Shown: in pieces, positions 10,566 to 41,900 of the stretch | Position numbering within the stretch: the first letter of the stretch is position 1 | How the letters are laid out: every line of letters begins with the position of its first letter | NCBI GenBank assembly: GCA_030704615.1 | Contig: CM060734.1 | Location: forward strand, 12,710,001-12,774,000 | Reading direction: 5' to 3' | Source: Takakia lepidozioides | Lineage: Eukaryota > Plantae > Bryophyta | DNA: 64,000 bases | The notes under the pieces: model-generated | Databases searched by the model: none | Told to the model about the DNA's origin: nothing | Seen by the model: the letters and a program-made list of their open reading frames with translations, nothing else | Made by a program: the position numbers and the translations under genes

Positions 10566-10610
10566 AGCCAACTGCAAAGGCAAAGAGGAAAAAAAGTGAA
10601 GGGCCCTTAC

Positions 10611-12499
10611 CACGCGTACAGATTTTACAACTTTGCTGATTTCCTTTACAAACTTATCATACACAGCAGCATGCACATAAAAACGTTCTGCATCTGCACA
10701 GTTTTGCCCACTAGCTTGTAATGCCCCTCTCACTGCTATGGGCACAATCTGCATGTGTAATAAATCATAAGTGTATATTAGTGTCTCAAAAATCAAAGTC
10801 TTGGTAATTGTCAGAGGAGAGAGAGATGTACTCATAAGATGTTGCTTTCCATAGACCCCACGTTGGACAGGACAAAAATAGCAAGGGAAAAGAAAGATGT
10901 ACTCATTAGTGAGAGACCCCATCTCTGTACCAGTTCTAGGTTGTTTACAAAGTAGGCCGTGCAAGGCTGTATTCCAGTCCCTGAATTGAAAGAGAAAAAG
11001 TAAGCAAAGGAAAATTGGTTATGGGAATGCCTGAGAGACATCTGTATCATCACAGACAATGAATGCATCTTTCCCACCAAGTTCCAGGACAACAGGTGTC
11101 AATGTCTTTGCGGCAGCTTCCATAACCTGAAAATAAACAGTACAGTGCATCTGAAGCCTCAAAGTATATCCATTCAAATGAAGAGTAAAACTTACAACTT
11201 ACATTTGGACAGATCTTGGAGGTAACAAGAAAGATCAGACGGGAAAGTAAAGACTTTCAAGACAAGCAAACGAACAAACCCACAGGACTGCAACCTTCTA
11301 GCTCCTAGAGCATGGACCAGCAGTGCTAGCTGAACACCATAACTCGCTTTCATCACTGATGATTGACTCAACTTTTGTACATATTGAGAACAACTTTTGC
11401 AAACAAAACTTTGCAAATAGTTCGAGGGAGCAATACCTCCAACCCACCTTCTGGCCCACAGCAGGAGACCCAACAAAAAAAACCTTGTGTACAGAGGTCA
11501 CCAAATCTTCTCCTGTCTCAGCAAACCTGCCACAAATGAACAGAGACTAAAACCTGCTAAATGACAGAGTCCAAAATAAATCTGGAATATTATTGTTATG
11601 TGAGCCGCACTGGCCCAGGCATGTGCAGTGACACATGCTGTTGCTTCCAATCTCCTGCTAAATACTGACAACACTTATAATTGCAAGGGTCCACAATCTC
11701 ATTCCCTTAAGACAGAGAAGATACAAACCGATAGAAGATTGCTTGTGTATAGGGGCAGAAAACTTAATTAGATCATCCAAACAGACAACTGGCTTTCTGC
11801 TTAGAAGTACTTGTGTTTCTTGAGTTCCTAACATAAGTGCTTGGAATTACATTTCAATGAAGACCAGGAGAAGCTTGTCCAGTCCTTCCACGAAGGAAGT
11901 CACCATCAACTTGTTCTGATTGAAAGATGAGATTGATCATCGCCACTCTCACGGATTATTCTGGAAAGTGCCAATCTAGGCCCCTTCTCTTTGGCCCCCT
12001 TACGAGAAACTGCCAAAACTAAGCCAGTAATCACTCAAAAACATTTCAATAACCATGGGTAATGAGCTTACCCTGTGACTACATGAACAAGGTCTTGAGG
12101 AGCTCCAGCTACCGCTAATGCCGCTTGGATAATGCGAAGGTAGAAGCACCCTGACCAACTTGCATGCTCTGACACCTTCCAATTTCATGTCCCCAAAATG
12201 GAAGGAACAATGTCTTAGATGCAAATGTGGGATCCACAAAAATAGCCCGCCCAACAAGAGTATCAACCTGTCAGAGAAAGCATCCAAGGAAGTAACATGG
12301 AGATAAAGACCCAAATCATGAAAATCTCACACTTTTCATGCTTACCTTGATAACAATGGCATTACCGGCCAAGACAGCTGCTACCATAGGGTTGAAGATA
12401 TTATGGAAGGGATAGTTCCATGGCACAATTGCCGCCATCACTCCCAAAGGATGGTACTCCACCCTATTCGACTTATATGGCATTACTGTTCCTGATGAC
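10611..12499 (-). pseudogene. ALDH22A1: Aldehyde dehydrogenase family 22 gene fragment, five consecutive internal exons: 12499-12346, 12175-12072, 11526-11448, 11126-11031, 10748-10611
   Basis: Spliced translation [32 protein letters not shown]|[23 protein letters not shown]|FAETGEDLV..FVGSPAVGQK|[27 protein letters not shown]..|..ALQASGQNCADAERFYVH. Phases are consistent. N- and C-terminal exons were not found nearby. Confidence 0.88.
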
Positions 12500-13823: not shown

Positions 13824-14514
13824 AACCCCACAAAACAACTTGGAAGTAGAATTGTCGCACCATGTTGTTCCCAAGTTTCATTTAAAAAAAACCAAACTAG
13901 GGCTTCGCGATGCTCCGCACTACCAATGACGAATGGTAACTGAGTGCTGAATGGAGGAGAAAGACAGAACAGAAGAGTTATAAGATTTATGATTTTAACA
14001 TAGCGTATATCAGAGCCGATATAATTGCTATTAGAAGGGGTGAGGGAAATAAATTCACTAAGTAGCAAAAGTTTCCGAAATATACATCATAAAATGATTG
14101 GAACATAGTATTTATTCATGATTCTATTTTTTTTTAAATAAATAGGGGAGGAATGTCCTTTAATTCATATTAAGAGATAAAGTGAGAAAAAATTAATTTG
14201 ATTTGTAGGAAGCTTAAATGTTGGATGTATTGGTTCACTTTAACCGTATATGAAGTACTGACAATGGTACAGCTATATCAGGGTAGCGCTGTGGCTTTTG
14301 CTTATGTCAAAAAAGAAGTGGTTTTAAATAACCCGTGATATAGGGTGTATCCACTTGCTGATTTTGGGCAACATTGGTGGGCATTGAATTGTTTTTTTTA
14401 AATCCTCTTTCCGGTATCAATTCATGACATTTATTTATTTATGGACGTGCCTCTATGTGATTCGTAAGTGGTGAGAGAGGTTTAGAATTATGAGGTTCAT
14501 TCATGGACCTTTCC

Positions 14515-16160
14515 TTTAATCCCACAAGAACAAACCCCATCTTCAAAGTGGTGAAAGTGGTTAGTGCCCAGTAAAATAATTTGCTTGGTGGACAATCTTT
14601 GAGATGAACCTGGTGGCGGGTGTCAGGTACATACCCTGCCTTCTCCATCTGCCGAGACAATCTTCTCAGCTGAGCATGGATCTCCTCAATTTTTAGATGC
14701 AATTTATCATCTACAAAAAAGGTGTGCACCCTGTTGTCAACCTCAATGCAGTAGTGACATGGCTCCTTTCTAACCCACATCATTTTCCTCACCTGCGTTG
14801 CATGTCATACCTGCCAGCTGCAGCATAGATGTTTGACAGCAACACGTAAGTCGCAGCATCCTGTTCATCCTACTTGAGAATAGATGTTGCAGCACGTTCA
14901 GCCATCTCCACATTGCCGTGAATCTTGCAGGCACCAAGCAAGGTCCTCCATACCACAACATCTAGTTTAATTGGAATGTTGTTAATGAAGTCCTCTGCCT
15001 CATCTAATCGCCCTGCACGACCAAGAAGGTCAACCATGCAGACAAAATGCTCTACTGTTGGAGTGACACCATGATCTTGACTCAGTGAATCAAAGTAGTG
15101 TTTTCCTTCATCCACTAGGCCAACATGGTTATATATGGAGAAAACACATATGAAGGTGATATTGTCCAGTTCAAACCTTCCTTTTGCATTCCGTCAAATA
15201 GTTGCAGGGCATTCCTGTGACAACCATGCTGGATATATCCTGTGATCATTGCAGTTCATGACACCAGATTTCGTTCAGCCATATTGTCAAACACTCCTTT
15301 TGCATCTTCGATGCTGCTGCATTTGGCATACATGTACATCAGGTACAATTCCAGCTTTCATGATGTCTTCATGGACCTTTTTTCCCTTTTCCAGGGCTGC
15401 TAGGCTGGCACACACATTGCAAACACAAATGAATGTAATATGGTCCGGCTTCACCCCTTTCCACATCATCTGCTCATAGGTCTCCAAAGCCTCCATCCCA
15501 CACCCATACTGGGAATATCCTGCAATCATTGTGTTCCATGACACCACATTTTTTTCAGCCATACTGTCAAACACTATCTTTGCATCTTTGATGCTGCCAC
15601 ATTTGGCATACATGTCCACGAGGCTATTGTTCAGAATGACATCAGGTACAATTCTTGCTTTCATAATGTCATTATGGACATTTTTTTCTTTTTCCAGGGC
15701 TGCTAGGCTAGCACATGCATTGCAAATGCAAATGAATGCAACCTGGTCTGGCTTCACCCCTTCCCACATCATTTGATCATAGGTCTCCAAAGCCTTCATC
15801 CCACACCCATGCTGAGCATATCCTGCAATCATTGCACTCCAGGATACCACATCTCGTTTAGTCATATTGTCGAACACTACCTTTGCATCTTCGATGCTCC
15901 CACATTTGGCATACATGTTCACCAGGGCAATGTTTAGAATGACCTCTGGTACAATCCCAGCTTTGATGATGTCAGCATGGACCTCTTTGGCCTTTTCCAG
16001 GGCTGCCAGGCTCGCACATGCATTGCAAACACAAATGAATGTGACCTGGTCTGGCTTCACCCCTTCCCACATCATTTGCTCAAAGCCTCCATCCCATACC
16101 CATGCTGGGCATATGCTGCAATCATTGAGGTCCAGGATACCACATTTCCTTTAGACATAT
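14515..16160 (-). pseudogene. PLS-class PPR protein with E/E+ and internally deleted DYW domain (RNA-editing factor pseudogene)
   Basis: Repeated ~101-aa PLS triplets (GVKPDQVTF..ALVNMYAKCGSIEDAKVVFD..DVVSW), HFVCMVDLLGRAGRL, VWRTLLGACKIHGN, GYVPDT and terminal HHFEDGVCSCG; several frameshifts and stops. Confidence 0.92.
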
Positions 16161-19573: not shown

Positions 19574-19589
19574 GCCCACACTATTTTAC

Positions 19590-20018
19590 GCCTCTCATTT
19601 CAAGATAATAGGGTCTTCAATGGGCACGTGCGATGTGGCCGGTGGGCCCTGCGCACGGACGCCCGGCTCCCCAGCACCCCGCCCACCCCGCCCGCCACTG
19701 CGCCCGGTCGCCCAGCTGCGGGCGCGGCTGCAGCAACCACGCCCGCGCCCCCGTCCGCCGCGCGGCCAATCCCCCGCCCATGAGTCCGCTGCCATCCAGT
19801 CTGCCAGTCCGCTGCCAGCAGTCTACCAGTCCGCCAGTGTGCCCGCCAGTCCGGTGCCCAGCAGTCTGCCAGTCCGCCAGTCTGCCCGCCAGTCCGGTGC
19901 CCAGCAGTCTGCCAGTCCGCCAGTCTGCCCGCCAGTCCGCTGGCCAGTCCCCTGCCATCCAGTCCGCTGACGGCGCAGGATCCCATAACCCATCCGAGCC
20001 CTCCATTTTTAGGGCTGC
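19590..20018 (+). repeat. Left TIR of MULE with internal CAGTC(C/T)GC array
   Basis: Reverse complement of 31733-32156 with small indels; GC-rich, with about 20 CAGTCYG units at 19780-19970. Confidence 0.95.
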
Positions 20019-21571
20019 GAAAATGGAAATGATCTTCCCACCAAATCCCAGCCGCTCTCTTTTGACGGCTGTTTGTTGTCCGATGTTCCGGTAGGCGTTT
20101 CCATGCACGCGACTGTTCCTCTTTTGCGCGCGATGTTCATGATGATGATGAAGCATGTGCTTGAACATGAGAGGACTGTCTCGGCACTACAGCCACCATC
20201 GTGCATATGCTTCCACTATTTTTGCCTTCTTGTTGTGCTTTCGGGAACCTTCGTTTTATGGTTTGGTTCTATGTCATAAATATGGAAAATGCCGACATCT
20301 GTCGTCGATAACGTCCTCTGCTTGTGATCCGTCATGATACGTTTAGCCCTTTCGTACTGCATCCCTCATGAGAGCCTTCACAAGTTTAGTTCGTTAAAGG
20401 AACCCATGGGTAACATGTGCGCGAAAATGGTGGAAGCGTATGCACATGGGGGCGTGTATTGCAGATTTCATATCGGACGATGGGACTGTTTATGTGACCA
20501 AGTACAGCGGCTTGCATCCGTCGTGCATAAGTTGTGGAAAAGGGTGGAGAATCTGAAGAAACCCAGCTTTGTGATGGATCCACATGGTATTATATAAGGG
20601 ATGGCAGCACAAAAAAGCAATTCGAGTCGTCACGAAACACCATCCAGTGTTAAGGTCCTCAAACATCCACACGCACCTGCTGATGTCTGAGCCACGAGGC
20701 GGACATCAGCAGACGGACTAGGCTGAGACAATTGCATCTGCAAATGTGCATGGATGTTTGAGGTCCGTTGTGTCGCGAGTCTGTTCACAGTGAGTCCGTT
20801 GGCCCGTCAGTGCTCCGGATATTCCCCTTATCGCGTGCATAACAGTCAGTTTGGAGGCGGTCTGCTGGAAGTCCGTCTGTTGGGATATCAGTCTGTCGCA
20901 CTTGTGAATTTGTCAGCCTGTTGTGTCGGAAGTCTGTTGCACTAAGTCTGTTTGACTTCTTATTTTCCCTCCGGTCAGTCTTTTGGCTTGTTCTCCCGCC
21001 AGTCTGGTGAAACGTCCGTCTGCTGGACAGTTCTCCTCTATGGATATCAGTCTGTTGGACTGTGCATGCATCAGTCTGTTGTGCCGCGAGTCTGTTCACA
21101 ATGGGTGTGTTTGACTTTCCTGTTCTCCCCTTACTCTCTTTTGTCTTCATTCCGCTGGCAGGGAAGTGCCTCCAATATGAAGCCGCTTCGCCTCAGCGAA
21201 GCGAATAGTCCGCTGGACTGGCGGTCCGGTGGACTCTCTGCCCGATGGGAAATGAGTCCGCTGCACTTGCGAGGACCGTGGATGAATTTAGTACGATGCG
21301 TTCGTTCGGTGGACGTATTCAATGCGATGACGGCGGATAGTTGGCGCCTGTGAAATCGCGCCCCGTTGGCAGTGCCATGCCCGCTTTCCCCCTTCTATTT
21401 CAACTTTCTTCTCATGTTCCCTGTGCGATCGACTCCATTCTCTTCGCGCCTGTTTCTTCGCACAGTTTTACACTATTTTGTTTTCCTCTTTGCGTTTCCA
21501 TCACCGTAACGAAAGACGACCGTTCTTTCCCAGGTGTGGAGAGTCGCGGTGAGCCGCGAAGCGTCGCAAAC

Positions 21572-24500
21572 ATGCTCGCCTTCGTAACATCTCAAAGTTC
21601 ATCGTCTCGGTGAGGTTCTCACTTGATGCGGTGTTTCCATTCCATTTTGTGTCCTCTTCTTGCTTAGGGTGAGTCTTTTCATAGGACTTCTATCTGTCGC
21701 TCATTGTCCTTGCACCTTCGTTTCATTCTGCAGCGATGGAGGATGCTTGTGAAAAAGGTGGAGCGGACTGGGTGGATTTTGTGCACCAAACCAGACTGAA
21801 GAGGAGCGAAGGTACTGGTACTCACCAGACGAGTTTGATCATAAAATAGTGGAAGCATTTATAGACCTCCGCGCCCGGAAGCCCAAAAACTCAAATTGGC
21901 AGAAAGACAAGCTCTTCTGTCCTTTCTGTGAAGAGGTTATCAAGGACAAAATCCAACTAAATCGGCATTGTGTTGACACGGGTTGCAAGGAGACTGTTGC
22001 AATGATTCCACGGGATTTCAAGCCTTGGCCGATACTGAAAGAAATGTCGATTGTCAAAGAGGCCACAATGCGTTTGCGCGGATCAGTGCTTGACCCCCGC
22101 ACTTTGGAATTAGACGAAGTGCGCGCACGGTATGGTGTCCATTGTGGTGGCCCGTCAATGGAGGATTTGCAAGTGCAGGAAACGCCGGACGCTCCCAGAA
22201 AACGTAAACTGAGTGATGGGGCCCAAAAAAAGGAGAGGCAAAAAAAGGAGAAGGCTGCAAGGTCTGCTCGCGAGGCAAGGGCAAAATCCACGCAACAGAC
22301 TGAACCCCGTCCTGGGCGGCAGACCCACACCATCAGTACTGATACTGAAAGTGAATCTGCTCAGGGCCTGGAAGGGGTGACAAGTCCAGTGGACATTGAC
22401 TTGCCTGACCAGACTCGGCAACAGACTCACACATATCGCGACCCATGCCATCGGTTTAGGGTCAAAACCAAAAACTCAACAGAGCACTAAAGGGCCAGTC
22501 TGCCCTGGCACATTGCGCCTCGTTGACTTTGGGCTTTTCCCACCAGAGTGCCCACCAATTGGGGATCCAGACTTCTTCCGTTATTTCTACAGAGTTGCCC
22601 AGTCAGGTCTGCTACGCACATTCATCCGACAGGCGGAACAGAATTGGTTGAACAGCTTTGAAGATGAAGATGACGATGATGAAGTAGATGAGGTAATGGT
22701 CAGTTTGACCGCCCAGTCTGTTCTCTGTGCTGTTTGAGTCCATCATCGGGGTCACGTTGCCTATTCAGTCTGGTCAGTCCGCTGCGTTCTCTCCTCAGTC
22801 CGCTGGTTCACTCCGCTCGTCAGTTAGTCTGTTTTATATCGCTGCATTACTTACTGAGTCCGTTTGTCAGTCCGCTGGTCCAGTCCACTGGTATAGTCTA
22901 CTAGTTGCCTCCACCCTACGTACGCACGTTACAGTCTGCTGGTCTGTGAGTCCAGTCCGCTGCATGAGGTGAATATAGAGTCCACGTCCATGTTCCTGAC
23001 GTCCAAGTTTTCTGTCGTGTACCAGGATGAACGTGTTTCTATTCGTAGGGCCATTCAGGCTTGGCGGATACCTAGCAATGATGCTCATTTACAAGCGACT
23101 GCAGTGCGTGCGGAAGTGGACCGCGTGTGAGAGTGCATATTATTGAAGTATCATGGGTCATCTGCTGCTATAGCGGCATTACATATTCAAGACGCGTCGG
23201 GGGGGAATGTGTCTGGGACAGCCGAGTCTGCCATCCAGCAGACTCCCATTCAGCAGGCCGTCATCTAGTAGACTCCCGTTCAGCAGCCTGTCATCCAGCA
23301 GACTCCAACGGAGCAGACTCCCAACGAGCAGCCTGTCATCCTGCAGACTCCTCTCCAGGAGCCCATCATGTAGCCCATGCCAATGGGAAGTCTTGTCATC
23401 CAATAGACTGCGGACCAGCAGACTGACCAGCAGATTGCCTTTCTCTCACATAGCACGGCGCTTTTTGCAGTTTGGCGATCGCCATCACCGGTAATTCGAC
23501 CCGGAGCTAAAGACCTCACACTTCCCCGGCTTAGGGTGGGAGAAATTAATCCCCATTGGATTGGAATAATGAGCTCCACCGGATTGTTGCGGACCGCCGG
23601 TGGTCATTTGTACCCTTTTCATTATTCCATGGAGTTTTCTATTGAGGAAGCCAACCATGTTCTAGAAGCCGCCTCTGCTGTTGCCATTGAAGCCACAAGC
23701 GACCAAAATGCGCCGCCTCTACTTGTGCAGCTGATTCTCATGGATGACCCACGGCCTGAAGACCTCAGACATATGCCTATGGCACATTCAACCTTTGGGG
23801 TGCGAAGAAAGCACTTGTTCGGATTGACTGAGGAGGACTTTGAGCGCATGGCAGCTTCCTTCCTACAACACAGATGGATGCAATTTGGCAATTTCCGCTC
23901 ATACAACAAGTTGATGAAGGATCTGCATAGTTTGAGAATGGACTTACTCCATGGAACAGACCATTCACAGAAGTTTGTGGTGGATGACGCATTGCACTGG
24001 TTTGCATTGGTGATGGAGCGAGCAGTATTCGACATTGTTTTGCAGAAACCCAATGTCTTCTGTGGTGTGGGATCCCAATTAAAGACTGCATCGGCGCCAT
24101 TGCTCATCTCGATGGAGCATGCCTGTGCCGGAAAATCAAGGACATTGGCCTCGTCGGAAATCTCTTGGAAGGTAAAATGTTATGGGCAACTTTCGTGTTT
24201 CAGCTCAATTTCTCTTGCCAACTTTTTTAGAAGTTCACATTTGCATAAACATGTGTTGCAGGGCGAGTTGATCTAGGAGACAAGCAAGTGCAGGCTGCTT
24301 TCGACTCTTTTGCCAGAGGTGCAAGGGACCTTGTCCTGGCTTTACAAGGAGTTCGGGAGACTGTCCAGCAGACTGGCCACAAGAATGTCGAACAACATAT
24401 TCCCCACGACACATGTGGGCAGACTGCCCAAGTGCTGGAGACCGAGCATGTGCACCAGACCGTCCCGGGTAATAGGCCGGATCACTCCCAGCAGACTGCC

Positions 24501-27459
24501 CTGCACACACATACTCAGTATGTGCAAACAGTACTGAGTGGGCAGCGAACTTTGCAGACTTTGCAGCAGACCGGAGAACAGACCGGCCATCAGACTGCCC
24601 CTCAGCCGACTGTGCAGCAGACCAGCTAACATGACCACCAGACTGCCCCTCAGCAAATTGTACAACAGACCGTGCAGCAGACCGACGAATCCAGCCAGCA
24701 GATTGCCCCTTAGTAGACTGTGCAGCACACTGGCGAATCCACTCAGCAGATGGCCGAGCAGACTATCCAAGAGACTAACAGCCAGTCTGTTCCCTGGATT
24801 GTGCAACAGACTCGGATGCACTGGCCTCACTGGGACCCTGTGGACGAATTTCTGCTGAGTTCCCAACAACATGTTTTTGGATCTGTCAGTATGAGTGTTT
24901 TGACCGAGTCCACTTTTCCCCCAGGCACATTCACTGACGACGTCATCAGGTCACCGGTAAAGCATTCTTATCCAGCTCCCCGTGGCCTGCCTTCTATGAC
25001 CTTCCAGCTTAGTCTCGTTTTCGTGCGCTCAGTGGCGAAAGCCATAGATGAGTCTTACGTGATGACCGAACTCAATTTGGGAACGCAAAACCGTATCATA
25101 GATCTTACAGAAGAGTCTGAGGAAGCAATTGTCAGTGGGTCTTCCATACATGTTCTTGATGTTTCCCAAGTCCATGGAGATCCGAACACCCAGCCAGCTG
25201 TCCACCAGACTGACCAGCACACTGAACAGTGGACACATGGAAGGACTGCCGAGCAACCTGTGGCGAGGCAGCATATTGTCTTCATTGATGAGCAGACTGA
25301 ACCGCAAACTAACTAGCAGACTGCACAGGTCACAGATGGAAGGACTGACCAGGATGACTCAGAACGGCAGACTGCACAGCTCAGCTCTGACTGCACAGTT
25401 CAGACTGCACGGCCTGACCAACACACTGCACACTTCACAGAGGGAAGGACTGATGACCAACCTGCCACCGAGCACATTGCCCACATTGAGGAAGAGACTG
25501 AACCGCAGAGTTGCCAGCAAACTGCACAGTTCACAGACGAAAGGACTGACGAAGAACCGACGACCGAGCAGACTGCCCACATTGAGCAACAGACTGAACA
25601 TGCTGGCAGGCACACTGACAAGGAACCACATGCGGCGCAGACACAATCTGGTATAGCGCTGGATTACATGGAGTCTGCTCCCTCACCCCTTGGGCAGGTT
25701 GTGTCATTTCCTCTTTTAGCACTGTTGTTTATGTTTTAGCACATTGTGAAATTGGGCTAATTCGTCATTTTGCTCGGTATCCTCACAGGATGTTCGTCCC
25801 TCCATCGGCAGACTGTCTACTTCTAAGGACATGACATCTTCCGCCCATGCTGCAAACGTGGGATCAACAACCAAGAAAGGTGTAGGGGTGAGTACGCCCC
25901 CCGATGCGCGGGTCAGTTCTACGCATGCGACCCACGAAGCTGCAAAGACAGGTCCAGCAAGTGTAAACAAACCTGCTGACCAGCCTCTATTGCGAAGTAG
26001 GGCGACAGTACTATGTTTGTCTGCTCTATCCAGCCCGCCTACAGCTGTCCCTGCTTCCCAGGGGAGAGGTAAAGCCAAGAAGCGGACTGTCGTGGACCAT
26101 GCTGAGGAGGTAGAGGAGGGTCCGAGTACCAAGAGACCGGCGAAGAAAAAGTCTGGCGTCTTTATGAACAAGAACCGCAAGCTGGCCTTGGACATGGACA
26201 AAGATGTGGGTCGTTTCCTGGAGCAGCACAGGTGAGTACTGTGCTCAGTCTCCTCGTCTGTCTTTGTCGTTAAGTGCTTTGCGCTCTGTTGTGGTCAGTT
26301 TGCACGCTGGTCAGTCTGCTGCTGGTTTCATCATTGTCTGTTGTGGTTAGTCTTGTCAGTCTGATGAATTGTTCAGCCTGTAGAGTGTTTGGTACCATAT
26401 TGACGTCAGTCTGTTCAGTACATGAGGCTTCCCGAAGGATGGTCTGCTCTGTGCAGAATGGGTGCTCGGTTTGGCAAAACACATACTCTGCACGTGAAGG
26501 CGGGTAATTCCATGCTGATGTTTTTTTAAGGGGACCCACGGTTTGAATGTGGACTGTCGCCGGATGACATAAAGGCGCTCAAGAAGGTTGAGTCGGAGTG
26601 CACAGATAGACTCCTGGAGCTGTGGTGTCGATTCTATGAGAAGTCGGTTGAGGCTGCGTTCACCAACACTATTGTTGTTTTTCCAACGTCGACGTGGACG
26701 GTGTTGAAGTCATTGGGGGTGGGGCAACATGAAAGCCTTCTGGAGGTCTTGAAAGGTTGCCTCAGCACTGAACGACTGGGCAAGGACTTGAAAGAGTGCG
26801 ATTTCATTTTGGTGCCAATTGGGGACGAGTAAGAACTCTTCCGAGTCTGCTGAGACTGTCTCCTGAGTCATAGTTTGGTTTCGCAGTGTCGTCTTGACTC
26901 TGAGGACCTCTGTATTTGTGCAGTGGACTGGGTTTGAAGATTGAGTCTGCTGAGTGCTGAGTCTGCTGAGTGTCGGTCTGCTGAGTCTGCCCATCATGAT
27001 TGTGCAATGACGCCATGTTGTTTGATACCATTGCAGGGGGCACTGGAGTGTTTGTATCATCGACCTCCGCAAGGGCTGTTACACTCACCTGAACTCTATC
27101 AGGACTCGCATAAATGTCCCTTTGTTCTAGGGTGGATTCGGAAGCTTCATGCTGAGTGCTTAGGGTACTCGATGGACTCACCAGAGTGGCATGAGATTGT
27201 CCAAGCATTTCAGTTCCACGCGCCTGATGTGCCCCAGCAACCATTCAGCTGGGAGTGTGGCTTTTATGTCATGTCATTCATTCAAGTGTTTTATGAGTGG
27301 GTAAAAGTCAGAGCAAATGTCTCCAAGACTGCAAAGCCAGAGAGAGGAACACCTTTCACGAAGGACTGGTTTACTTTCAAGTTTGCACTTGGGCAGCGAA
27401 TGCAGTGTGCCCAGTATATCATGCGGGGGTTGGACAATGTAGAGAAACTGCTCTCATGA
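21572..27459 (+). pseudogene. MULE accessory gene: zinc-finger-like motif, unknown domain, Gln/Thr repeats and C-terminal Ulp1/C48 SUMO-type protease (spliced, disabled)
   Basis: FCPFCEEV..LNRHC motif; acidic stretch; globular segment 23454-24171; QT repeats 24350-25650; Ulp1 motifs DFILVPIG(~26805)|GHWSVCIIDL..HLNS (exon from 27037)..VPQQPFSWECGFYV. Stops and frameshifts present; the exact start and exon chain are inferred. Confidence 0.75.
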
Positions 27460-28071
27460 GTATGATGTACTTGTCATGTGAAGTCTATGTACCGAAATAA
27501 AAAATGCAGGTCTTTTCGCTTACTATTCCAGTGGTGATGAGCACTTTTGTGTACTGTGGGTGCTGGCATGTTTGTAATGTTGTCACTAAACTCAATGGAC
27601 ACAATGGTGTCAATTTTTCCATGCTGCTGAGCTTGAATGTGCGAGCAATACACTGCCGAGGCTAGGACTGCTGGGTCTGGTACCTAGTCTGGTAGGCACC
27701 ATGTCCATGAGTCCGCTGGGACGCTGGATTGGCATGAGTCGTTAGGGAGGTAGTCCATTGGAGCCTGTCCATTTTGAGTCTGCTGTTGTGGATGAGTCTG
27801 CTTGAGAGTTAGTCTGTCCAGCAGTCTGCTGGAAGAGTTGCAGGGATGAGGTGGAAGTGTGGTGAGCAGACTTTTGGAGTGGGCAGCAGACTGGCTTACT
27901 GGCGCTTGCAATCTGTTGACTGTGACTCTGTTGGGAGACTGTGCGTGAGTCCGTTGGGAGACTATGCTTGGAAGACTGTGTGGGAGTCAGTTGGGAGACT
28001 GGAGGAGACCGTTGGGAGACTGTGCATTAGTCCATTGCGGACTTGTATTTCAGAAAGGGACAATGCTACCA

Positions 28072-28269
28072 GAGGAATTGCAGACTTATATTGTCTTCTT
28101 CGTGACACCTACACGACGTGAAACCTTATCTCTTTTCGAGGAATTGCAGACTTATATTGTCTTCTCCGTGACACCTACACGACGTGAAACCTTGTCTCTT
28201 TTCGAGGCATTGCAGACTTATATTGTCTTCTTCGTGACATCTACACGACCTGAAACCTTGCGAATTTTC
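28072..28269. repeat. 66-bp tandem triplication at the transposase 3' end
   Basis: Units 28072-28137, 28138-28203 and 28204-28269 (GAGGAATTGCAGACTTATATTGTCTTC..). Confidence 0.92.
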
Positions 28270-31200
28270 GAGTATATATGTGCTGCAGGTGCAGGTGCAG
28301 ACACCCTCTTGCTGGTTCTCCGCAAAACCCTAGGCCGGGTTTTCCAGGCCTCCACAAAATCTCGTCTCCTTTTCAGAGACATGTTGTTGTTGTCGTTCAG
28401 AGGACGGAAAGCCTTCGCTGCCGCAGGGTGCAACATTCTAGCCGCATTTTTTGTCAGGATATCAACGAGCTGCCCTCTGCACATATGAAGAGCAGATCGG
28501 GCATGTGCCTCCAGGTATTTGTCATCACCTACAATGCGAAGTATGTCCGCGAATTCTTGTTCCATTGAGGCTGAGACCTCCAGAGGTGCCTCGTCGTAGG
28601 GGAAGTCGTCCGGAGGATGTCTTTCCATGAACTGATTGGATTCGTCGTTGTCGCCGGTACCATTGCCCAAGAGCAAGTTAGGTAATCCTCCATGAATGGT
28701 TCCCAGCGCCGTGCCACAAGCGCGCACAAGGAGGCCATCCTGCAGGTCAGGGTGAAGCATCTTCAGGACACGGACCTGATGCTTGCATAAGTTTCCCTTC
28801 ATTGCCCATGGGCACGTGCAACAACCCCAATCGCAATCAGGATTGTAAACAATGTATGTTGTGCCGGGGTGGTTGCTGCTGAGAACGTAGGCTGGTTCAC
28901 CAGACCCAAGGGAAGAGTAACACTCTCAGCAGGAATGTCTCGTGCCGCAAGTATAGAACTGGATATGTACTTTTCGTGTTTGTCATTTCTTATGAACCCG
29001 TGGGTCTTCAAATGGATTGCGTACCAGTAGTGTGTTCCCATATAAGCCAGTCCACTCTACGACCACTCATCTTGCCTTTCCCCATGGCAAGTCATGCCTT
29101 CAGATTTCCATGGTATGCCTCAATGCTTGCGTTTGTGTCTTGGCTCGCATGAGGGACATGGCGGGCTGCTGTACACCACATTGCTATTTTGGGCTTCCAG
29201 TACTGTTCGATATAGTCAAGAAATTCATGTCCTTTCGGGTATTTTGACCTCATACGACGGATTCTCCTTGCAACCCACCGAAGCGCTCTTTTCTCGTTGC
29301 GTGGTCCCCCTCTACAGTACATGAGGTCTCCCATATCCTTCAACAAGTTTACAGCGGTCACCGGATCCTTTGTTTTCTTGCATGATTGCTTCACCCATGC
29401 CTTGCGGACATGCCAAAGGCAGAGGAAAATGAGTACTCATTCAAAAACAATTCTGCACAACACACATGGTACACATTAGAGTCTTGGGATCGGACTGCAA
29501 TGGTGGACTGCCGGAGTGGACTGTAACAACGACCTGTATCAGCGGGCAGAGCCACTGGACTCGCCCAGTGGACAGTACAATGCCATGACGTTGATGTGCT
29601 GGAATAACCCCATTGGACTACCTAGTGGACTTCCCCATTGGACTTCCCCTAGCTAGGACTGGGGCAGCGGACTGCCACAACGGACTGCCGAGCGGATTTG
29701 CCAGGGACTGCCGAGTGGACTTGGCAGCGGACGGCCGACCCCAGGGACTGCTGAGTGGACTTAGCAGTGGACTGCCGAGCGGACTTGCCGGGGACTGCCA
29801 GTGGACTTGCCAGGGGACTGATGAGCGGACTTGACAGCGGACTACCAGTGGATTTGCCCAGCGAACTGCCATCGGGTTTTGCCACAGGAGTCTGCCAGTG
29901 GACTGTAGCAATGGACTGCTGCAGTGGACCTCGACAATGGACCGGTGATGTGGACCAACAGACTTACCGAATAGCGTTGATTTCTGCTTTGGCATCGTCC
30001 ACAATGAACGCATTGGGTCGCCAGCTCGGCAAATCTGCGAGGAGTGAATCGCGCAAGGCTCTCATCCACGGAACCAGGTCTCTTGTCCGATTCATCGCGG
30101 ATAGGATATATGCAACTGGTATACCGTTCAACCACTCGTCGAAGACCATCAACGTGTACAATGGGAACTGTTGGAATGCACAATGTAAGATGGTCAGAGC
30201 ATGCAAATTCCGCTCAGTTCTGCACGAGAAGACTTCATAAGAGTGATGAGGTTTGCAGCGGTTCACAATGGGTCTGCCCCTCGGTCTTCCGCAACGTATA
30301 CATGAAAACATACAGAAAGGGTTAGCACACCAAATATTATGTGAATGTTGCATGGTACTATGCTATCATGCTCGTACAAGTCCATGGAATCGTTCAAATA
30401 GTACATTGTCATGATTTGTCCCAAAGGTTGCATCACATGCAATGATACGGTCATGTTCTAGTTCCAGCATTCGTCGTTTCTGCCACGGAGTCTGTATGCC
30501 AATAGTGAATGGCAAATCTCCATCAAAATGCTCGAATGTTGGCTCTAATTTCTCCTCTTGATAGAAAAAAACGGACGCAGGATTCTGGTCTCTCCACATG
30601 CGCACACTCTCTGGATCATCGGCGTGCTTTTTGAAGGTTTGCCACGCACGTTTCTCGGCAAGGTTGCGAACATCTTGTTCCAACAAGAAATCATCGCAGG
30701 TCCATGCATCGCCCAAGCCGGTGTTGTTCATCACGTGCTCTTTATGCTCCATCATGATTTGGGTGACCGACAGGCCTCGACACAAACACTCGACGACCCA
30801 GGCTTTCAATTCCTCGCTAATGTGTGGTGCATAGGCGTGGTGGGTGTTCCTGAACTCTGCGGACTTCCCATGCGAGGGTTTCCTTTGCGCATCTGTATGC
30901 TCCATGTTGTTGTAGTACGTGAGGACAAAGATGTCAGGGGCGAGATAGCATTGCTGGACCTTGAAACAACATTGGCAACCACGTTTGTAAGACTCTCCAT
31001 ACTCCGACTTCTTTCTCCTTGGGCCTTTATGAGGGCAAGATGCTCCAGCACCCACAAGAGGTCCTCCACGCTTCTGTTTTGGATCCTCCACTATTGCCTT
31101 GTTGGTGCGCTTGTCATCAGGACCGTAGCAGCATTGATACCTGGGCAGAAAATTCTAAAATCGATATCCAACGACTTGAGGAAGCATAAAATCAGAGAAC

Positions 31201-31588
31201 TCGTGAAACAAAAAATGGCAACAGACATGCAATGAAACAGCAAAAGGATTGAGGATGGTGCACACATAATACTGGACAGAAATGTGTTGGCTCTGGGTGC
31301 TTTTCGCGAGCCGGGTTCCACTTTAGAATGGACATTCACCTAAAACTGAGTGGGGTAGTCCTCCAAACTCTCCTCTCCCAGGACGAAGTCACCAACTCTA
31401 TCCCAAGGTATGCAGGTCTTTTCAACATTCACTCGCACACCCATAAACCCATATTGCGTCTCACTCTTCCAATGGAGATCCTTTATGTTGAAGGGTCCTG
31501 GTTTTGCTGTTTGCAAACATTGTCGAAGAGGCCGTATAAGCGGGCTTTCCGTGATCAGTATATCATCGGGTTTTGCTTCCACGTCCAT
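28218..31588 (-). pseudogene. MULE DDE transposase with SWIM finger, At4g13970/At1g60560-like (spliced, premature stops)
   Basis: IPWDRVGDFV, YQCCYGPDD, KRGCQCCF, APHISEEL, FTIGIQTPWQ, CDATFGTN, PLYTLMVFD..IPVAY, FIVDD, CLWHVRKAW, SIEAYH and SWIM CTCPWAMKGNLCKH; GT-AG introns at ~31263-31144, ~30403-30170 and ~29968-29455. Confidence 0.9.
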
Positions 31589-31732
31589 GCCCTATACAGT
31601 ACAAAGGACACGCTTCTGAACATGCAAGAAACGCGCCGCAGTACAAGACACGATCGACAACGTGCCAGGAGAACAGTGCGCACGTTCGCGGCTGCTGGCA
31701 AGTGGCAGGCGGCAGGGATGCAGGTTTGAATT

Positions 31733-32156
31733 GCAGCCCTAAAAATGGAGGGCTCGAATGGGTTATGGGAATGGACGGTGACGATCCTGCGCCGTCAGCG
31801 GACTGGATGGCAGGGGACTGGCCAGCGGACTAGTGGGCAGACTGGCGGACTGACGGACTGCTGGGCAGCGGACTGGCCAACAGCGGACTGGCGGGCAGAC
31901 CGGCGGACTGGCAGATTGCTGGGTAGCGGACTGGCAGACTAGAGGGCAGCGGACTCATGGGCGGGGGACTGGCCGCGCGGCGGACGGGGGCGCGGTTGTT
32001 GCAGCCACGGTTGCTACAACCGCGCCCGCGGCTGGGCGACCGCGCGCTGCGGCGGGCGGGGCGGGCGGGTTGCTGGGAGCCAGGCGTCCGTGTGCGGGGC
32101 CCACCGGCCACATCGCACGTGCCCATTGAAGACCCTATTATCTTAAAATGAGAGGC
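31733..32156 (-). repeat. Right TIR of MULE
   Basis: Inverted copy of the left TIR, ending ..AAAATGAGAGGC. Confidence 0.95.
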
Positions 32157-32189
32157 CTATTTTACCACCAACACTAATTGGGGACCCAC

Positions 32190-35900: not shown

Positions 35901-38900
35901 GTATCCATATTATTTTCTGATGAAAGCAGACAAAGTGAGTGAGAGACATTTACTCCCAAATCTGTCCAGGTGACTAGAGGGTTGTTCACTCCAGGTGGAT
36001 AGTGCATAATCCATATGGCTGGGGGGAATTGTGCTATGTAGCTTAATAGTGGCAAGGTGAGGGAAAACACTGATTGGTTCTCTATTTTTCCAGTGTTTCC
36101 TGTGAAAGTGTGGATTTGGTAGCATTTGCTGAAGTGTAGGAAACTTGCAGTATTCCTGGAGAGATACATGATGCTGACCAAAGCCAGCGTAAATAAGAGC
36201 CTCTTCCCCTTGCATATACTACCCTTTGTGGGGGCGGGGGGGTGGGCTGTATCATTGATACGCTGCAGAATTTGTTGCACATGGGATTAACTTTTATGCC
36301 AAATCCATTGATAGCTGACATGCCCATTGTGGTTCTTCAGGAAAGGTGTTCAAGATTGTTGGGAGAGTGCAGTTTGATATTGCAAAACTCTTAGATGCCT
36401 ATGTAAGTATTTCCGTTCTGTTTTTTCAAATTGTAGCACTTGTTAACTTTGTTCATAATTAAGGTAGACCTCTTTTATTCATCAGCCGCTTTGCTTTCCA
36501 AGAGGAGCCATGTAGCGCGCAATTTGAGGCAAACAGCAGGAATGGAAGCACTGGCCTGGCGGATGATCGGTTTAATCCTTTGGCTGAATATACACTTGGC
36601 TCAAACTTAGATGTGATTTTCTCATGCCTAAATGCTGTTACAATGGAAAATCTGATTGAAATGTCAGGAGTTTATGTACTGCAGGCTGCCCATGTTTCTC
36701 AGACCGTCACAGCGCCCACTGAGAGTCTTATCAGTGAACTTCAGACAGTTGGGGTGAGTGCATGCCAAGTTCCCTAGAGACAATTGAACTCTGTAAATAA
36801 AAGTCCCTTTCCCTGCAGGTACTACACCTTTCGTCGGTGGGCTCTATACTGAGTTCACTAGAATATACACTCTCCACTCATCCGAAGGACCTTTAAAAGG
36901 CAAAGAATCCCATAGAGGGAACCTGGCTAACATCGTCCTTGGATGACCTGTCAATCTTCTTTCACCTGCTTGAATGAATAATATAATGAGAAAGTTATTG
37001 GATACTCTATGCCATTTCCTTAGACAAATATCTGTTAGACCTAATTTAGATTAGGAAGCACTTCATCCCTACAGTTGTGACATTTCATATCTGAACAGAT
37101 GTGACTCTTCCTTATGAAGAGTCATCTTCCTTAGGATAGAACTTAAGAAGAAAACATTATTAAGAAGTTAGTTACTTTGTAATATACAGAAGGATTCTCT
37201 CTCATTCTCTCTCTCATCTGAATGCTCTCATTTCATGGTATCAGAGCCATCCTGTGAAACCAACTAAAGTTGTCTAGTGCGATCCACAGTAGTCGAGGGA
37301 CGCCTCGACTCCTGCGGAACGGGGGACGCCTCGAACCATAGGATCTCACTTATTCATTTTTCTTTTAGGTGCTTGTCAGAAGCACAACAAAACAAAATAT
37401 AATTCGAGTAAGCTGCTTTGAAAAATAAGCACTTTAAGATCCGCATAGGCGGGTTCGTATTAGTTCTTCTGAAGAGGAAGAAGTTCTAAAAACAGCTCTG
37501 TTTATCTCATTGTGAAGTCAACAGATCGTTGGGAAGATGTCAGGCTTAAAGGTCACGGACCTTCCCAAATTCGATGGAACTTATTTCCATGTGTGGGAGC
37601 ATAGGTTCCTAATGTTTCTAAGAGCTGAGAAAATGCAAGGTGTTGTTGATGGCACAGTGCCAAGACCCACCACACCCATCCCAGCTTCAGGAGGAGCAGT
37701 TGTGCATACTCCTGCTACTGGCGCTGGCAGCAAGATAGAATGGGATAACCAAAATAACATTGCGTTATCCTATCTTCTTAATTGCCTGGATAATAGCCAG
37801 ATAAATCATGTTACTGCTTTTACCATCGCTCAAGAAGCATGGACAGCACTTAACGATCTATATGATGCGCAAGACACGGTGACCAAGATGTATCTTAAGG
37901 ATCAGCTTGTCACTCTAAAGTTCAAGGAGGGAGCCAGCCTTACTAAGCATATTCATGCTTTTCGAGCTTTGTTAGATCAACTTAGCTCTGCTGGTTCGGG
38001 GGTACGTAACGAGGAGGCTGTTATATCCTTGATGCGTAGTATGCCACCTTCATATCGTAATTTCTTAACAGCCTTAAGAAGAAATCAGGCTCTTACCCTT
38101 ACACAACTGATCACCTATCTTCTCCAGGAGGAGACCATGATGAAACATGATGATCCTGAACCTGTTGCCACTTTACTGTCCACCCAAAAGCAGGGGTTCA
38201 TACCTCGAGGAGGAGGTCGACCTTCTACCTCATCTGTATCTACCAGTCAGCCCCCTAGCTCTAATGGGAAGCGTTCTTTAAAATGCTTTTACTGCAAGAT
38301 GACCAATCATGTCATTAAGGACTGTCGCAAGCGCATTGCTGCAGAAAAGCAAGCTGCTCAAAATCTGGACAGACCAAAGACTGTTAGACGCTTGCTTGTC
38401 ACAGCTATGTTTCCTACTCCTGCAAGGGATACGAGTTGGTACGTTGATACCGGTGCCACAGACCACATGGCCCATGATAGGAGTCACTTTCATACCTACA
38501 CTTCTTTAGATCCTGCTCAAATTGTCTATTTAGGAGACAACTCGACTCAATCTATTGTTGGCATAGGCGATGTCTACGTTACCCTTCCTCACGGTGAGCC
38601 TATCATTATCTCTAATGTTCTTCATGTCCCTGGCCTTACCAAGAACCTCTATTCCATCAACACCTTGATTCTTCCAATGGTGAGATGGTTTTACGTCGGG
38701 GAATTTGTTCCCTTACAGACTCCCAAGGTCAGCTTATTGCCAAATGTCCCCAAGTAAATGACCTTTACAAACTTGGTGAGTCCTGCCCTCCCCCTCCCAT
38801 TGTTGCCATCCCAGCATCTACTGCCACACCTGCTGAAGTGTGGCATCGACGTCTTGGCCATATTGGCCAAGCTCGGCTTCACCAACTGTTCACTGGCAAC

Positions 38901-41900
38901 ATGGTTCGGGGCATTGCTCCTATGAGTCTGAACAAACTTTCCCCATGTGTGTCTTGTATCCAAGGACAACACAACTGTAAGCCCTTCCCAAAGGATGGTG
39001 CCAGTCGTGCTACTAAGCTTCTAGGTCTGGTTCACTCAGACATCTGTGGACCTCTTACACCTGCAACCCATTCTGGTTTTCGTTTAATTGATGACTACTC
39101 GCGTTACACTACGGTGTATTTATTACGCAAGAAGTCATGCTCTCCACACTTTCAAAGAGTGGAAAACCTATGCTGAAAATCAACTCCACAAAACAATTCA
39201 GGTTCTCCGAACTGACAATGGAGGTGAATACGTTTCGCAAGCCTTTACCGACTTCTGTGCTCAGTATGGGATACATAGGCAGTTGACAGTTCCTCATACC
39301 CCTCAACATAATGGTGTTGCAGAGCGCATGAACCAAACCCTCATGAAGATGGTGCGATCTACCTTATTTCATGCTCATCTCTCCAAGTCATATTGGGGAG
39401 AGGCCATGATTACAGCTAATTACGTCAACAATCGTATCCCAACCGTAGCTTTACCGCCAGACAAAACTCCTTATGATGAGCTATGGCATAGTTCTAAACC
39501 TGACATATCTCATATGAGAGTATTTGGCTGCACTGCTTTTGCTCATGTCCATGAACAGACTCGTACTAAGCTAGATCCTAGGAGTATCGAATGTCGCTTC
39601 TTAGGTTATAGTGAGTCCTCTAAAGCTTATAAGCTGGAGCGTAAGTCTGATCGCAGGGTTATTATTTCTCGTGACGTCCAATTTCTAGAAGATGTTACTT
39701 CATCTCTTGTCAACCCCGTATCTTTCAATGCTGATGGCCTTACAGATGAAGAATTGCAGCAAGAGCTGACTTTCTTTCAACCCTATCCTAATACAATTGT
39801 TCCACCATCCTACCCTGCACCTCCAGTGGGAGCAGTAGCTCCTCCCATCTTGCCTACCCCTCCTGGCACACCGCCTCAGGTTGTTCTAAAGACATATTCT
39901 AGACGGCCTACTACCCAAGGTACTTCTACTACCCAAACTACTGGATCCACCTCTCTTCCCAGCTCTCGTCCTCCATCGGAGCGCAATCATACTTGGACCA
40001 TTACAGCTCTTCCTTCTGGACGCCAAGCTGTAGGCTGCAAATGGGTTTACAAGCTGAAGATGAATCCTGACGGCTCCATTGCACGCTACAAAGCAAGATT
40101 CCTGATGGCCTTGAAGGTGCCGGGGATCTCCAACGAGCTTGCAAGTTACATCACTCTATCTATGGACTCAAACAGTCCTCTCGCATGTGGTATCAACGTA
40201 TTGATACTTTCCTTCTTAAAATAGGTTTTGTTCGCTCTACGGCTGATTCCAATGTCTACATTTATGATAAACACCCTGATTTTGGGATCTTAGCCCTTTA
40301 TGTGGACGACACCATCATTACAAGTAACAGTCTCTCTCTCCTTACTTATTGGGAGGAAACTAATTGTCTGCGGTAGAGCAGTTAATTGGTGGACTAATGA
40401 GATTAAACTCAAGATAGCTGAGAGACGAGCCCTCTATAAAGAGTGCTGCAATTTGGAAACCAACAGAGAATTGTGGGCGAGGTACTACCAGCTCCATAAA
40501 GATATCAATCAGCTTGTTAGGTCTCAGAAGAAATTATACTGGGACAAGTTATACAGTGAAATAAACTCAAACCACCATGGTGGTAATGACAAGAAATTCT
40601 GGTTGGCCCTTCAACGTTTGTACAAACCGAAAAACGGTCAGCAAGTACAAGCGCTGAAGACTACTAAAGGTGCAGTGGTGACTTCATCGGTTGACATTGT
40701 CAAAACCTTTGAAACTCACTACAGTATCCTTGGCAGAACTTCTAGGTCTAACAGTTAGGGGTCTTCTGCAGAATGGAGGGACACAGTTGGAAAAACTGTT
40801 CCTATGATTCAAAACAGCCCTGATGAACTGGAGTATATTTCAATGGCTTATAATGCTCCCATTAGTTCTTCTGAGATTGTGGAAGCAATTGAACATTTAA
40901 ATGGATATAAAGCTGGTGGACCTGATGGTATTGTCAACGAGCTTATCAAGCATGGTGGCGATCCCATGATAGAGGCCCTAGTTCTCCTCTTTAACCTTAT
41001 CTGGAAGACTGAAATGATCCCCTTTCGCTGGTGACAGGGGGTCATTGTCAATCTATACAAGAAGGGTGACAGAGAAGAACCGGGGAACTACCGTGGCATC
41101 ACGCTCCTCAATGCTGTTGGCAAGACATTCTGCAGAGTTATAAGTACTCGTCTCGAGGTTGATCTGGAGTCTAGAGGTTGTTTCCACGAAGGCCAAGCTG
41201 GCTTTCGGCGAAACAGGGGCTGTGTGGATCATATCTTCACTCTAAGCCAGATTATCCAGGGAAGGAAAAAAGAAGGGAAACCCACTTATGTCTTTTTCCT
41301 GGATGTCAAAAAGGCTTATGACACAGTGTGGAGAGATGGCCTATGGTTCCGCCTCTGGTCTTGTGGGATCAAGGGAAAGATGTGGAGAGTTGTCCACAAC
41401 TTGTATGCTCACACCAAAAGCTGTGTCACTGTTAACGGACAGAAGTCCAACTTCTTTGACATAGACCAAGGTGTAGCTCAAGGATGTACTCTCTCCCCTC
41501 TGCTCTTCAATGTTTTCATCAATCAACTCCTCGAGGATGTGGAAAGTGAGGGATTTGGGTTAAGGGTGGGTGATACCACCATATCAGCCCTTATGTTTGC
41601 GGATGACTTCGCAGGCATAGGGGAGACTCTAACCAATCTCCAGGAGTTGATTGATTGCGCGAAGAGATACTTTGATCTTTGGGGGCTAGAGGCTAATGTC
41701 AGCAAATGTGCAGTGGTAGCATTCAACGACAGAGGAGAGGGAGGAAGTGATCTTAAGTGGCAGTGGGGTAGCCAAGAGATCCCGGTCCTCCCTTCCTACA
41801 CTTACCTGGGCGTTGAGTTCTCCTCCAATTGTAATTGGGATGCACATATCCGGAAAGTTGTTCAAACTGGCAAGGGCAAAGCTCTGGGGCTCACTAAATT

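What the first reader, a model, noticed from the sequence alone, without database searches (positions are those of the whole stretch)
19590..32156. Self-contained Mutator system: transposase plus convergent Ulp1 gene, long TIRs and perfect TSD (VANDAL/KAONASHI-like architecture)
Seen: ~425-bp TIRs, exact 9-bp TSD, and two spliced genes reading inward with 3' ends ~760 bp apart. Known: maize MuDR has convergent mudrA/mudrB; Arabidopsis KAONASHI and VANDAL MULEs carry Ulp1-like genes, and VANDALs lack long TIRs and encode the anti-silencing factor VANC. Inference: this is a separate MULE lineage combining a long-TIR MuDR-like layout, a SUMO-protease cargo and a private DNA motif, and is a candidate TE-encoded counter-silencing system in a probable non-seed plant.
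Basis: partly seen in the sequence, partly recalled or inferred. Interest (0 to 1): 0.85.

Follow-up and report, generated by a model that had tools for sequence, protein, structure and literature searches.

The report
Dead moss transposon with helper protease
This is a broken copy of a moss (probably Takakia) jumping gene that carries a zinc-finger/SUMO-protease helper gene and is covered in its own short DNA word; intact relatives in other plants keep the same helper with a different word, which resembles the self-protection systems of Arabidopsis transposons, though nothing has been shown to bind the word.

Summary
In detail: a 12,567-bp Mutator-like element (19590-32156) with an exact 9-bp TSD, 429/424-bp TIRs (93% alike) and two convergent spliced genes whose stops lie 758 bp apart. 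A 98.5%-identical copy from a Takakia lepidozioides sample has open frames. The helper gene encodes a CCHC zinc finger, an unknown domain, Gln-Thr repeats and a Ulp1 protease, with no VANC domain. The word AGTCYG occurs 111 times (26 expected), oriented 91:9 in non-coding DNA. Two other families with related transposases carry the same convergent zinc-finger...Ulp1 gene. One is intact in about 20 assemblies, shows purifying selection on its Ulp1 and carries another word (GCAGAAC); its TIRs are only about 43 bp. So neutral one-off capture is rejected. Ulp1-MULEs with TIRs and in opposite orientation are already published; new are the moss lineage, the non-VANC finger and family-specific words. 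The scan has noted this word and design on other DNA of this genome.

The parts
19581..19589 (.). left target-site duplication, 9 bp
19590..20018 (+). left TIR, 429 bp; inner part is a motif-bearing tandem array (43-bp unit)
20019..21735 (+). 5' non-coding region of the helper gene, with a motif cluster at about 20750-21270
21736..22692 (+). helper exon 1: conserved ~80-aa N-terminal module with C-x2-C-x12-H-x5-C zinc finger (21918-21986), basic stretch, acidic end; two small frameshifting deletions in this copy
22693..23025 (+). helper intron 1, 14 motifs, all on the sense strand
23026..24171 (+). helper exon 2: Gln-Thr repeats, then a ~230-aa domain with no known relative; 5 stops and 3 frameshifts in this copy, open in L001
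24262..25697 (+). helper exon 3: long Gln-Thr-rich repeats (48- and ~96-bp units) spelled by the motif's reverse strand; 4 stops
25789..26231 (+). helper exon 4: low-complexity, with basic NLS-like stretches
26419..26828 (+). helper exon 5: N-terminal half of the Ulp1/C48 domain; 1 stop; 5' splice site unresolved
27037..27459 (+). helper exon 6: Ulp1 catalytic part (His 27041, Asn 27092 where relatives have Asp, Gln 27238, Cys 27256); one frameshift near 27125
27460..28217 (.). 758-bp region between the two stops; motif orientation flips at about 27840; 66-bp tandem repeat 28072-28260
28218..29452 (-). transposase last exon: third catalytic acid (~29121), SWIM finger (28823-28779); stops at 29439 and 29094, about 2 frameshifts
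29453..29967 (-). transposase intron 3, motif array (19 of 20 on the sense strand)
29968..30167 (-). transposase exon 3: MULE domain core, second Asp (~29999)
30405..31140 (-). transposase exon 2: Cys/His N-terminal region and first Asp (~30434)
31340..31588 (-). transposase exon 1 (ATG 31588)
31733..32156 (-). right TIR, 424 bp, with motif array
32157..32165 (.). right target-site duplication

Best explanation
Shown: a decayed copy of a two-gene Mutator family of a moss (probably Takakia). It was mobilised by a DDE-SWIM transposase (TIRs, 9-bp TSD) and carries an old, conserved helper gene (zinc finger, unknown domain, repeats, Ulp1-type protease). Family-specific short words are packed in one orientation into its TIRs, promoter regions and introns. 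Inferred: the helper protein (finger plus neighbouring domain) docks on the dense word arrays of its own family and brings the protease there, removing SUMO or a related modifier from silencing proteins or from the transposase, so that the family stays transcribed and mobile. It would work like VANC/KIU but was assembled independently. This copy lost the race: it was methylated and decayed by deamination.
For: Structure. Open-frame sister copy and polarised decay (32 C>T/G>A versus 2 reverse transitions; 22 of the 32 in CG/CHG; synonymous share 10/32, as expected for neutral decay). Motif 111 versus 26 expected (maximum 44 in 200 simulations); 18.8/kb in non-coding DNA, 9.1 in helper exons, 1.2 in transposase exons, 1.6 outside; polarity 91:9. 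These match the VANC-target hallmarks in PMC5735166 (non-coding, same orientation, dense, tandem; peptide repeats in the protein). The finger module is homologous across three families (12.6 bits versus at most 6.9 in 2000 shuffles), resembles classical DNA-binding fingers (PDB profile E about 0.002) and models as beta-beta-alpha. The sister family has an intact His-Asp-Gln-Cys protease, pN/pS 0.12 on Ulp1, and 11 synonymous of 20 variants in finger+middle+Ulp1 versus 5.2 expected, p=0.006; it carries another word, and the two words barely cross.
Against: One finger normally reads only 3-4 bp; the best shape matches were C-terminal fingers of OTU1 deubiquitinases (TM 0.45, not significant), so it may bind protein. 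The third family (L015/L021/L038/L066/L072) has the helper but no strong word (z at most 4), though it is heavily decayed. L018/L020 and L028/L030/L053 are word-rich without a detected helper (some contigs are short). The middle domain is not detectably shared between Takakia and the others. This copy has Asn at the catalytic Asp position. Motif counts are inflated by tandem duplication, and variant counts are small.
Confidence: 0.45

Rival explanations
1. The transposase itself reads the word (end synapsis plus intrinsic activation of cognate copies); the helper protease acts through protein contacts, for example by deSUMOylating the transposase or chromatin proteins.
For: Words fill the inner half of both TIRs and point inward from each end. 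Word-rich relatives without a detected helper exist (L018/L020, L028/L030/L053). A Mutator transposase alone binds motifs and hypomethylates cognate TIRs (AtMu1c; bioRxiv 10.64898/2026.08.24.746577). The finger resembles OTU1-type fingers in shape.
Against: In that preprint AtMu1 binding peaks were at the TIRs, whereas here words also fill introns kilobases from the ends. The long-TIR relatives L002/L003, which lack the finger-Ulp1 gene, have no dispersed word.
Confidence: 0.3
2. The words are a by-product of slippage and conversion of tandem repeats spreading inside the element, with no reader; the helper is functional but independent of them.
For: Many words lie in tandem arrays; they also invade coding exons as Gln-Thr repeats; one helper-bearing family shows no strong word.
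Against: The same core sits in arrays with different unit lengths (15, 23, 43, 48, 66, 96 bp) and as isolated copies, keeps sense orientation in the non-coding DNA of both genes (91:9) and avoids transposase exons (1.2/kb).
Confidence: 0.15
3. The word is a binding site for a host transcription or splicing factor that the element recruits.
For: Strand-biased intronic and promoter-proximal placement fits host factors.
Against: Each family has its own word, and the word is rare in flanking host DNA (AGTCCGC 30 inside, 0 outside).
Confidence: 0.07
4. Pack-MULE-type neutral capture of a host Ulp1 fragment in this copy only.
For: This copy's helper is broken and evolves neutrally.
Against: Open frames in L001; a homologous gene in the same place in two other families; purifying selection in the intact one.
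Confidence: 0.03

Closest known systems
KAONASHI (KI/KIU) MULEs and other C48-MULEs of flowering plants (PMC4948706, PMC2528002, PMC13317346)
   Same: Second gene with a Peptidase_C48/Ulp1 domain in opposite orientation to the transposase; many C48-MULE clades have TIRs.
   Different: Moss host (the review dates the capture in non-TIR MULEs to the monocot/eudicot split); two genes, not three; the N-terminus is a CCHC finger, not a VANC domain; the transposase clade includes an Arabidopsis host 'zinc ion binding protein' (NP_001329143.1).
VANDAL/VANC anti-silencing system (PMC5735166, PMC10398659)
   Same: Dense, same-orientation, family-specific short motifs in introns, intergenic and terminal regions; tandem peptide repeats in the accessory protein; related families have different motifs.
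   Different: No DUF1985/DUF287/PMD domain detected; long TIRs; no vanB-like third gene; binding and demethylation unshown.
Maize MuDR (mudrA/mudrB; layout from established knowledge)
   Same: Long TIRs, 9-bp TSD, two convergent genes transcribed from the ends.
   Different: The second gene is a ~1,600-aa finger-protease rather than the small MURB; no MuDR N-terminal Pfam domain was detected; element-wide motif arrays.
AtMu1 transposase as intrinsic activator (bioRxiv 10.64898/2026.08.24.746577)
   Same: A TIR-MULE whose own motifs mark cognate copies for activation.
   Different: AtMu1 has no accessory gene, and its binding peaks are at the TIRs.

Membership tests
Mutator/MULE superfamily | 8-11-bp TSD | tested here: met
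   exact 9 bp
Mutator/MULE superfamily | TIRs | tested here: met
   429/424 bp, 93%
Mutator/MULE superfamily | DDE transposase with MULE domain and SWIM finger | tested here: met
   Motif residues; Pfam MULE weak here (E 0.14), E 2e-4 plus SWIM in relative L010
C48-MULE (broad sense) | second gene with Peptidase_C48 domain | tested here: met
C48-MULE (broad sense) | gene conserved across copies and under selection | tested here: met
   Open in L001 (exons 1-2 only); selection shown in the sister family, not in this one
C48-MULE (broad sense) | intact His-Asp-Cys triad | tested here: inconclusive
   His-Asn-Cys in this decayed copy; His-Asp-Cys in both related families
KAONASHI/KIU (strict) | non-TIR, three-gene MULE | tested here: not met
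   long TIRs, two genes
VANDAL/VANC | VANC domains DUF1985/DUF287 | tested here: not met
   No Pfam hit in the helper pieces scanned here, in L001 or in L010
VANDAL/VANC | absent or short degenerate TIRs | tested here: not met
   (the sister family has about 43 bp)
VANDAL/VANC | dense same-orientation family-specific motif in non-coding DNA | tested here: met
VANDAL/VANC | accessory protein binds the motif and causes hypomethylation | not testable with these tools
   needs EMSA/ChIP and methylomes
VANDAL/VANC | transposase within the VANDAL clade | not tested
   No reference VANA/MURA sequences were on hand; the tree holds only relatives found here
MuDR (maize type) | convergent second gene, long TIRs | tested here: met
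MuDR (maize type) | MURB homology | not tested
   no reference sequence; no Pfam hit suggests it
Pack-MULE | no transposase; neutral host-gene fragments | tested here: not met
   transposase present; helper conserved and selected

The most novel reading that the evidence does not exclude
Moss MULEs of a transposase clade unrelated to VANDAL evolved, independently and long ago, a sequence-specific anti-silencing system in which a zinc-finger protein reads a family-specific word and a fused SUMO protease disarms host silencing at those sites, with finger and word diverging together between families.
Probability: 0.35. Interest if true: 0.82.

Novelty: new variant of a known kind. Interest (0 to 1): 0.56.

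Why it matters
VANC-type self-protection is shown only in Arabidopsis, and the role of the Ulp1 domain in plant transposons is described as unknown (PMC13317346, PMC4948706). A non-VANC finger-protease with family-specific words in mosses would show that this design arose more than once and that Ulp1 recruitment is not limited to flowering plants. The intact, near-identical sister family (L091-L110) gives ready material to test what the protease does and who reads the word.

Tried and rejected
Homologue searches with the Ulp1 exon and the transposase C-terminus were blank, as were exact look-ups of two window ORFs. P0002/P0003 (Flavobacterium repeats) are chance hits. The single-sequence fold failed (pLDDT 35); the alignment-based model is modest (pLDDT 51; 60-66 over the finger) and gave no significant Foldseek match. 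The Atlas found nothing for the middle domain. The tree is the quick version with weak deep branches; it does not show whether the helper arose once. Apparent Ulp1 motifs in L065/L082 were repeats, not protease. Sasaki 2022 (EMBO J) is not held and is cited only through PMC13317346. Paper searches found no description of such elements in mosses and did not identify the hosts of the related loci. Repbase/Dfam could not be checked. Two lines used a wrong frame; exon 3 was corrected, and exon 2 stops were read and the L001 comparison.
Full report
Observation. The element spans 19590-32156. The 9-bp flanks are identical and the ends are 429- and 424-bp inverted repeats, 93% alike without gaps. Six-frame translation shows a four-exon transposase on the - strand (31588 to 28218) with DDE-like residues and a SWIM finger, and a six-exon gene on the + strand (21736 to 27459) ending in a Ulp1/C48 domain. 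The stops are 758 bp apart. Four of five helper junctions are canonical and in phase, which supports one fused gene of about 1,600 codons (inference, no RNA evidence). No other copy lies in the window.

This copy is dead. The helper has 10 in-frame stops and several frameshifts, the transposase 2 stops and about 2 frameshifts. A search with the unknown middle domain found one real relative, P0001, on Logan contig L001 from run SRR15431198, a Takakia lepidozioides metagenome of washed plants (PMC9021317). L001 matches 21534-24389 at 98.5% without gaps, and its exons 1 and 2 are open. Of 44 differences, 32 are C>T or G>A towards the window and 2 are reverse transitions; 22 of the 32 lie in CG or CHG context. 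Ten of 32 codon changes are synonymous, as expected for neutral decay of this type. So the family was intact when it spread, and this copy was methylated and decayed. The host is probably Takakia; a PLS-class PPR gene in the window fits a non-seed plant.

The word. AGTCYG occurs 111 times against 26 expected from an order-2 Markov model (maximum 44 in 200 simulations); AGTCCGC occurs 30 times inside and never in 51 kb outside. Density (AGTCYR) is 18.8/kb in non-coding DNA, 9.1 in helper exons, 1.2 in transposase exons and 1.6 outside. In non-coding DNA it reads inward from each end, on the sense strand of each gene, 91 to 9, flipping near 27840; in exons it lies the other way (10 to 37) and spells Gln-Thr repeats. 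Tandem duplication makes these counts non-independent, but the core recurs in arrays of unrelated unit length.

Relatives. Transposase exon 2 found relatives at 30-44% identity and 80 metagenome loci. (a) L010/L005 and L091-L110: the same convergent layout, with the same finger module at the start and a Ulp1 domain with His, Asp, Gln and Cys at the end. All frames are open in about 20 assemblies. TIRs are only about 43 bp, and the word is GCAGAAC (57 versus 3 expected in L010). Variation among these assemblies shows purifying selection on the transposase (26 of 45 synonymous, 10.5 expected) and on finger+middle+Ulp1 (11 of 20, 5.2 expected, p=0.006; Ulp1 alone p=0.018), but not on the linker. 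(b) L015, L021/L022, L038, L066, L072: decayed copies of a third family with finger, middle domain and Ulp1, TIRs of about 130 bp and no strong word. (c) L002/L003: 300-bp TIRs, 9-10-bp TSDs, a small convergent gene with an RNase H1 N-terminal domain (Pfam E 5e-17), no Ulp1 and no dispersed word. (d) L018/L020 and L028/L030/L053: word-rich, no helper detected in the DNA held. (e) Angiosperm host genes, including Arabidopsis NP_001329143.1 on the 18.6-Mb chromosome (At4g13970 from memory and note s1-454932). The hosts of (a)-(d) were not identified; neighbouring genes look plant-like, and from memory several JGI ids are peat-moss samples (unverified). The quick tree puts this transposase near the finger-Ulp1 families, but deep branches are unsupported.

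The helper. A profile built without Takakia scores its exon 1 at 12.6 bits against at most 6.9 in 2000 shuffles; the shared pattern is C-x2-C-x12-H-x5-C after a helix. The profile's best PDB hits are classical DNA-binding fingers (CTCF, ZFP57; E about 0.002), and the model is beta-beta-alpha, but the best Atlas shapes are OTU1 C-terminal fingers (TM 0.45). DNA versus protein binding is therefore open. The middle domain is not detectably shared with the other families and has no known relative. No VANC domain was found. This copy has Asn where relatives have the catalytic Asp; a single G>A decay would explain it, but this is unproven.

Mechanism. Shown: transposon structure, an old selected helper gene, and oriented family-specific words. 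Inferred (0.45): the helper docks on the words and uses its protease locally against SUMO-dependent silencing, like VANC/KIU but built independently. The main rival (0.30) is that the transposase reads the words, as AtMu1c does for its own motifs, with the protease working through protein contacts. Others: repeat by-product (0.15), host factor site (0.07), neutral capture (0.03).

Comparison. Ulp1 in opposite orientation, with or without TIRs, is published for flowering-plant MULEs (PMC2528002, PMC4948706), and KIU proteins are VANC-Ulp1 fusions that recognise non-coding motifs (PMC13317346). Dense, same-orientation non-coding motifs and peptide repeats are VANC hallmarks (PMC5735166). The element is a C48-MULE in the broad sense and may work like VANDAL/KIU, but is not a member: long TIRs, two genes, no VANC domain. 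No paper on such moss elements was found.

Limits. Exons were searched apart; the joined-protein step was left out. Verdict: real, a new variant of a known kind, interest 0.56.

Noticed in passing
window 9338-10263 (-) and 41966-42891 (+): Two 926-bp pieces, reported as 100% alike, of a LINE 3' end; the second belongs to an RT-bearing LINE (about 40294-42891) inserted in a copia element (about 37500-43760). Suggests very recent retrotransposition.
   Followed up: partly
window 32970 onward (+): A host gene appears to start about 800 bp from the right TIR, with a probable proline-rich exon at 46561-47964; the motif-rich TIR sits in its upstream region. No Pfam hit for the two pieces tested.
   Followed up: partly
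window 14442-16150 (-): PLS-class PPR gene with an E+ motif and 303-bp internal repeats, near or within an aldehyde dehydrogenase gene (exon near 10539-11018, -).
   Followed up: partly
L002 14502-14759 (-), L003 16290-16457 (-): Long-TIR MULEs of the same transposase clade carry a convergent small gene with an RNase H1 N-terminal (Cauli_VI, hybrid-binding) domain instead of Ulp1.
   Followed up: partly
L065, L081, L082, L090 (- strand, downstream of the transposase): Another family carries a different convergent C2H2 finger gene and GCAATAC arrays; no Ulp1 detected.
   Followed up: partly
L005 1000-7000: A neighbouring element with a DUF7869 gene is packed with CACCCGTG (58 copies): motif coating in a different transposon type. 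L005 also joins abruptly to bacterial genes at about 16500, probably a chimeric assembly.
   Followed up: no
L006/L007 7550-15231: Element with ~600-bp TIRs and a 9-bp TSD holding two inverted transposase remnants (foldback-like).
   Followed up: no
window motif versus L010 motif: The two words look related (GCAGACT versus GCAGAACT, one base inserted) and both contain a CHG site.
   Followed up: no
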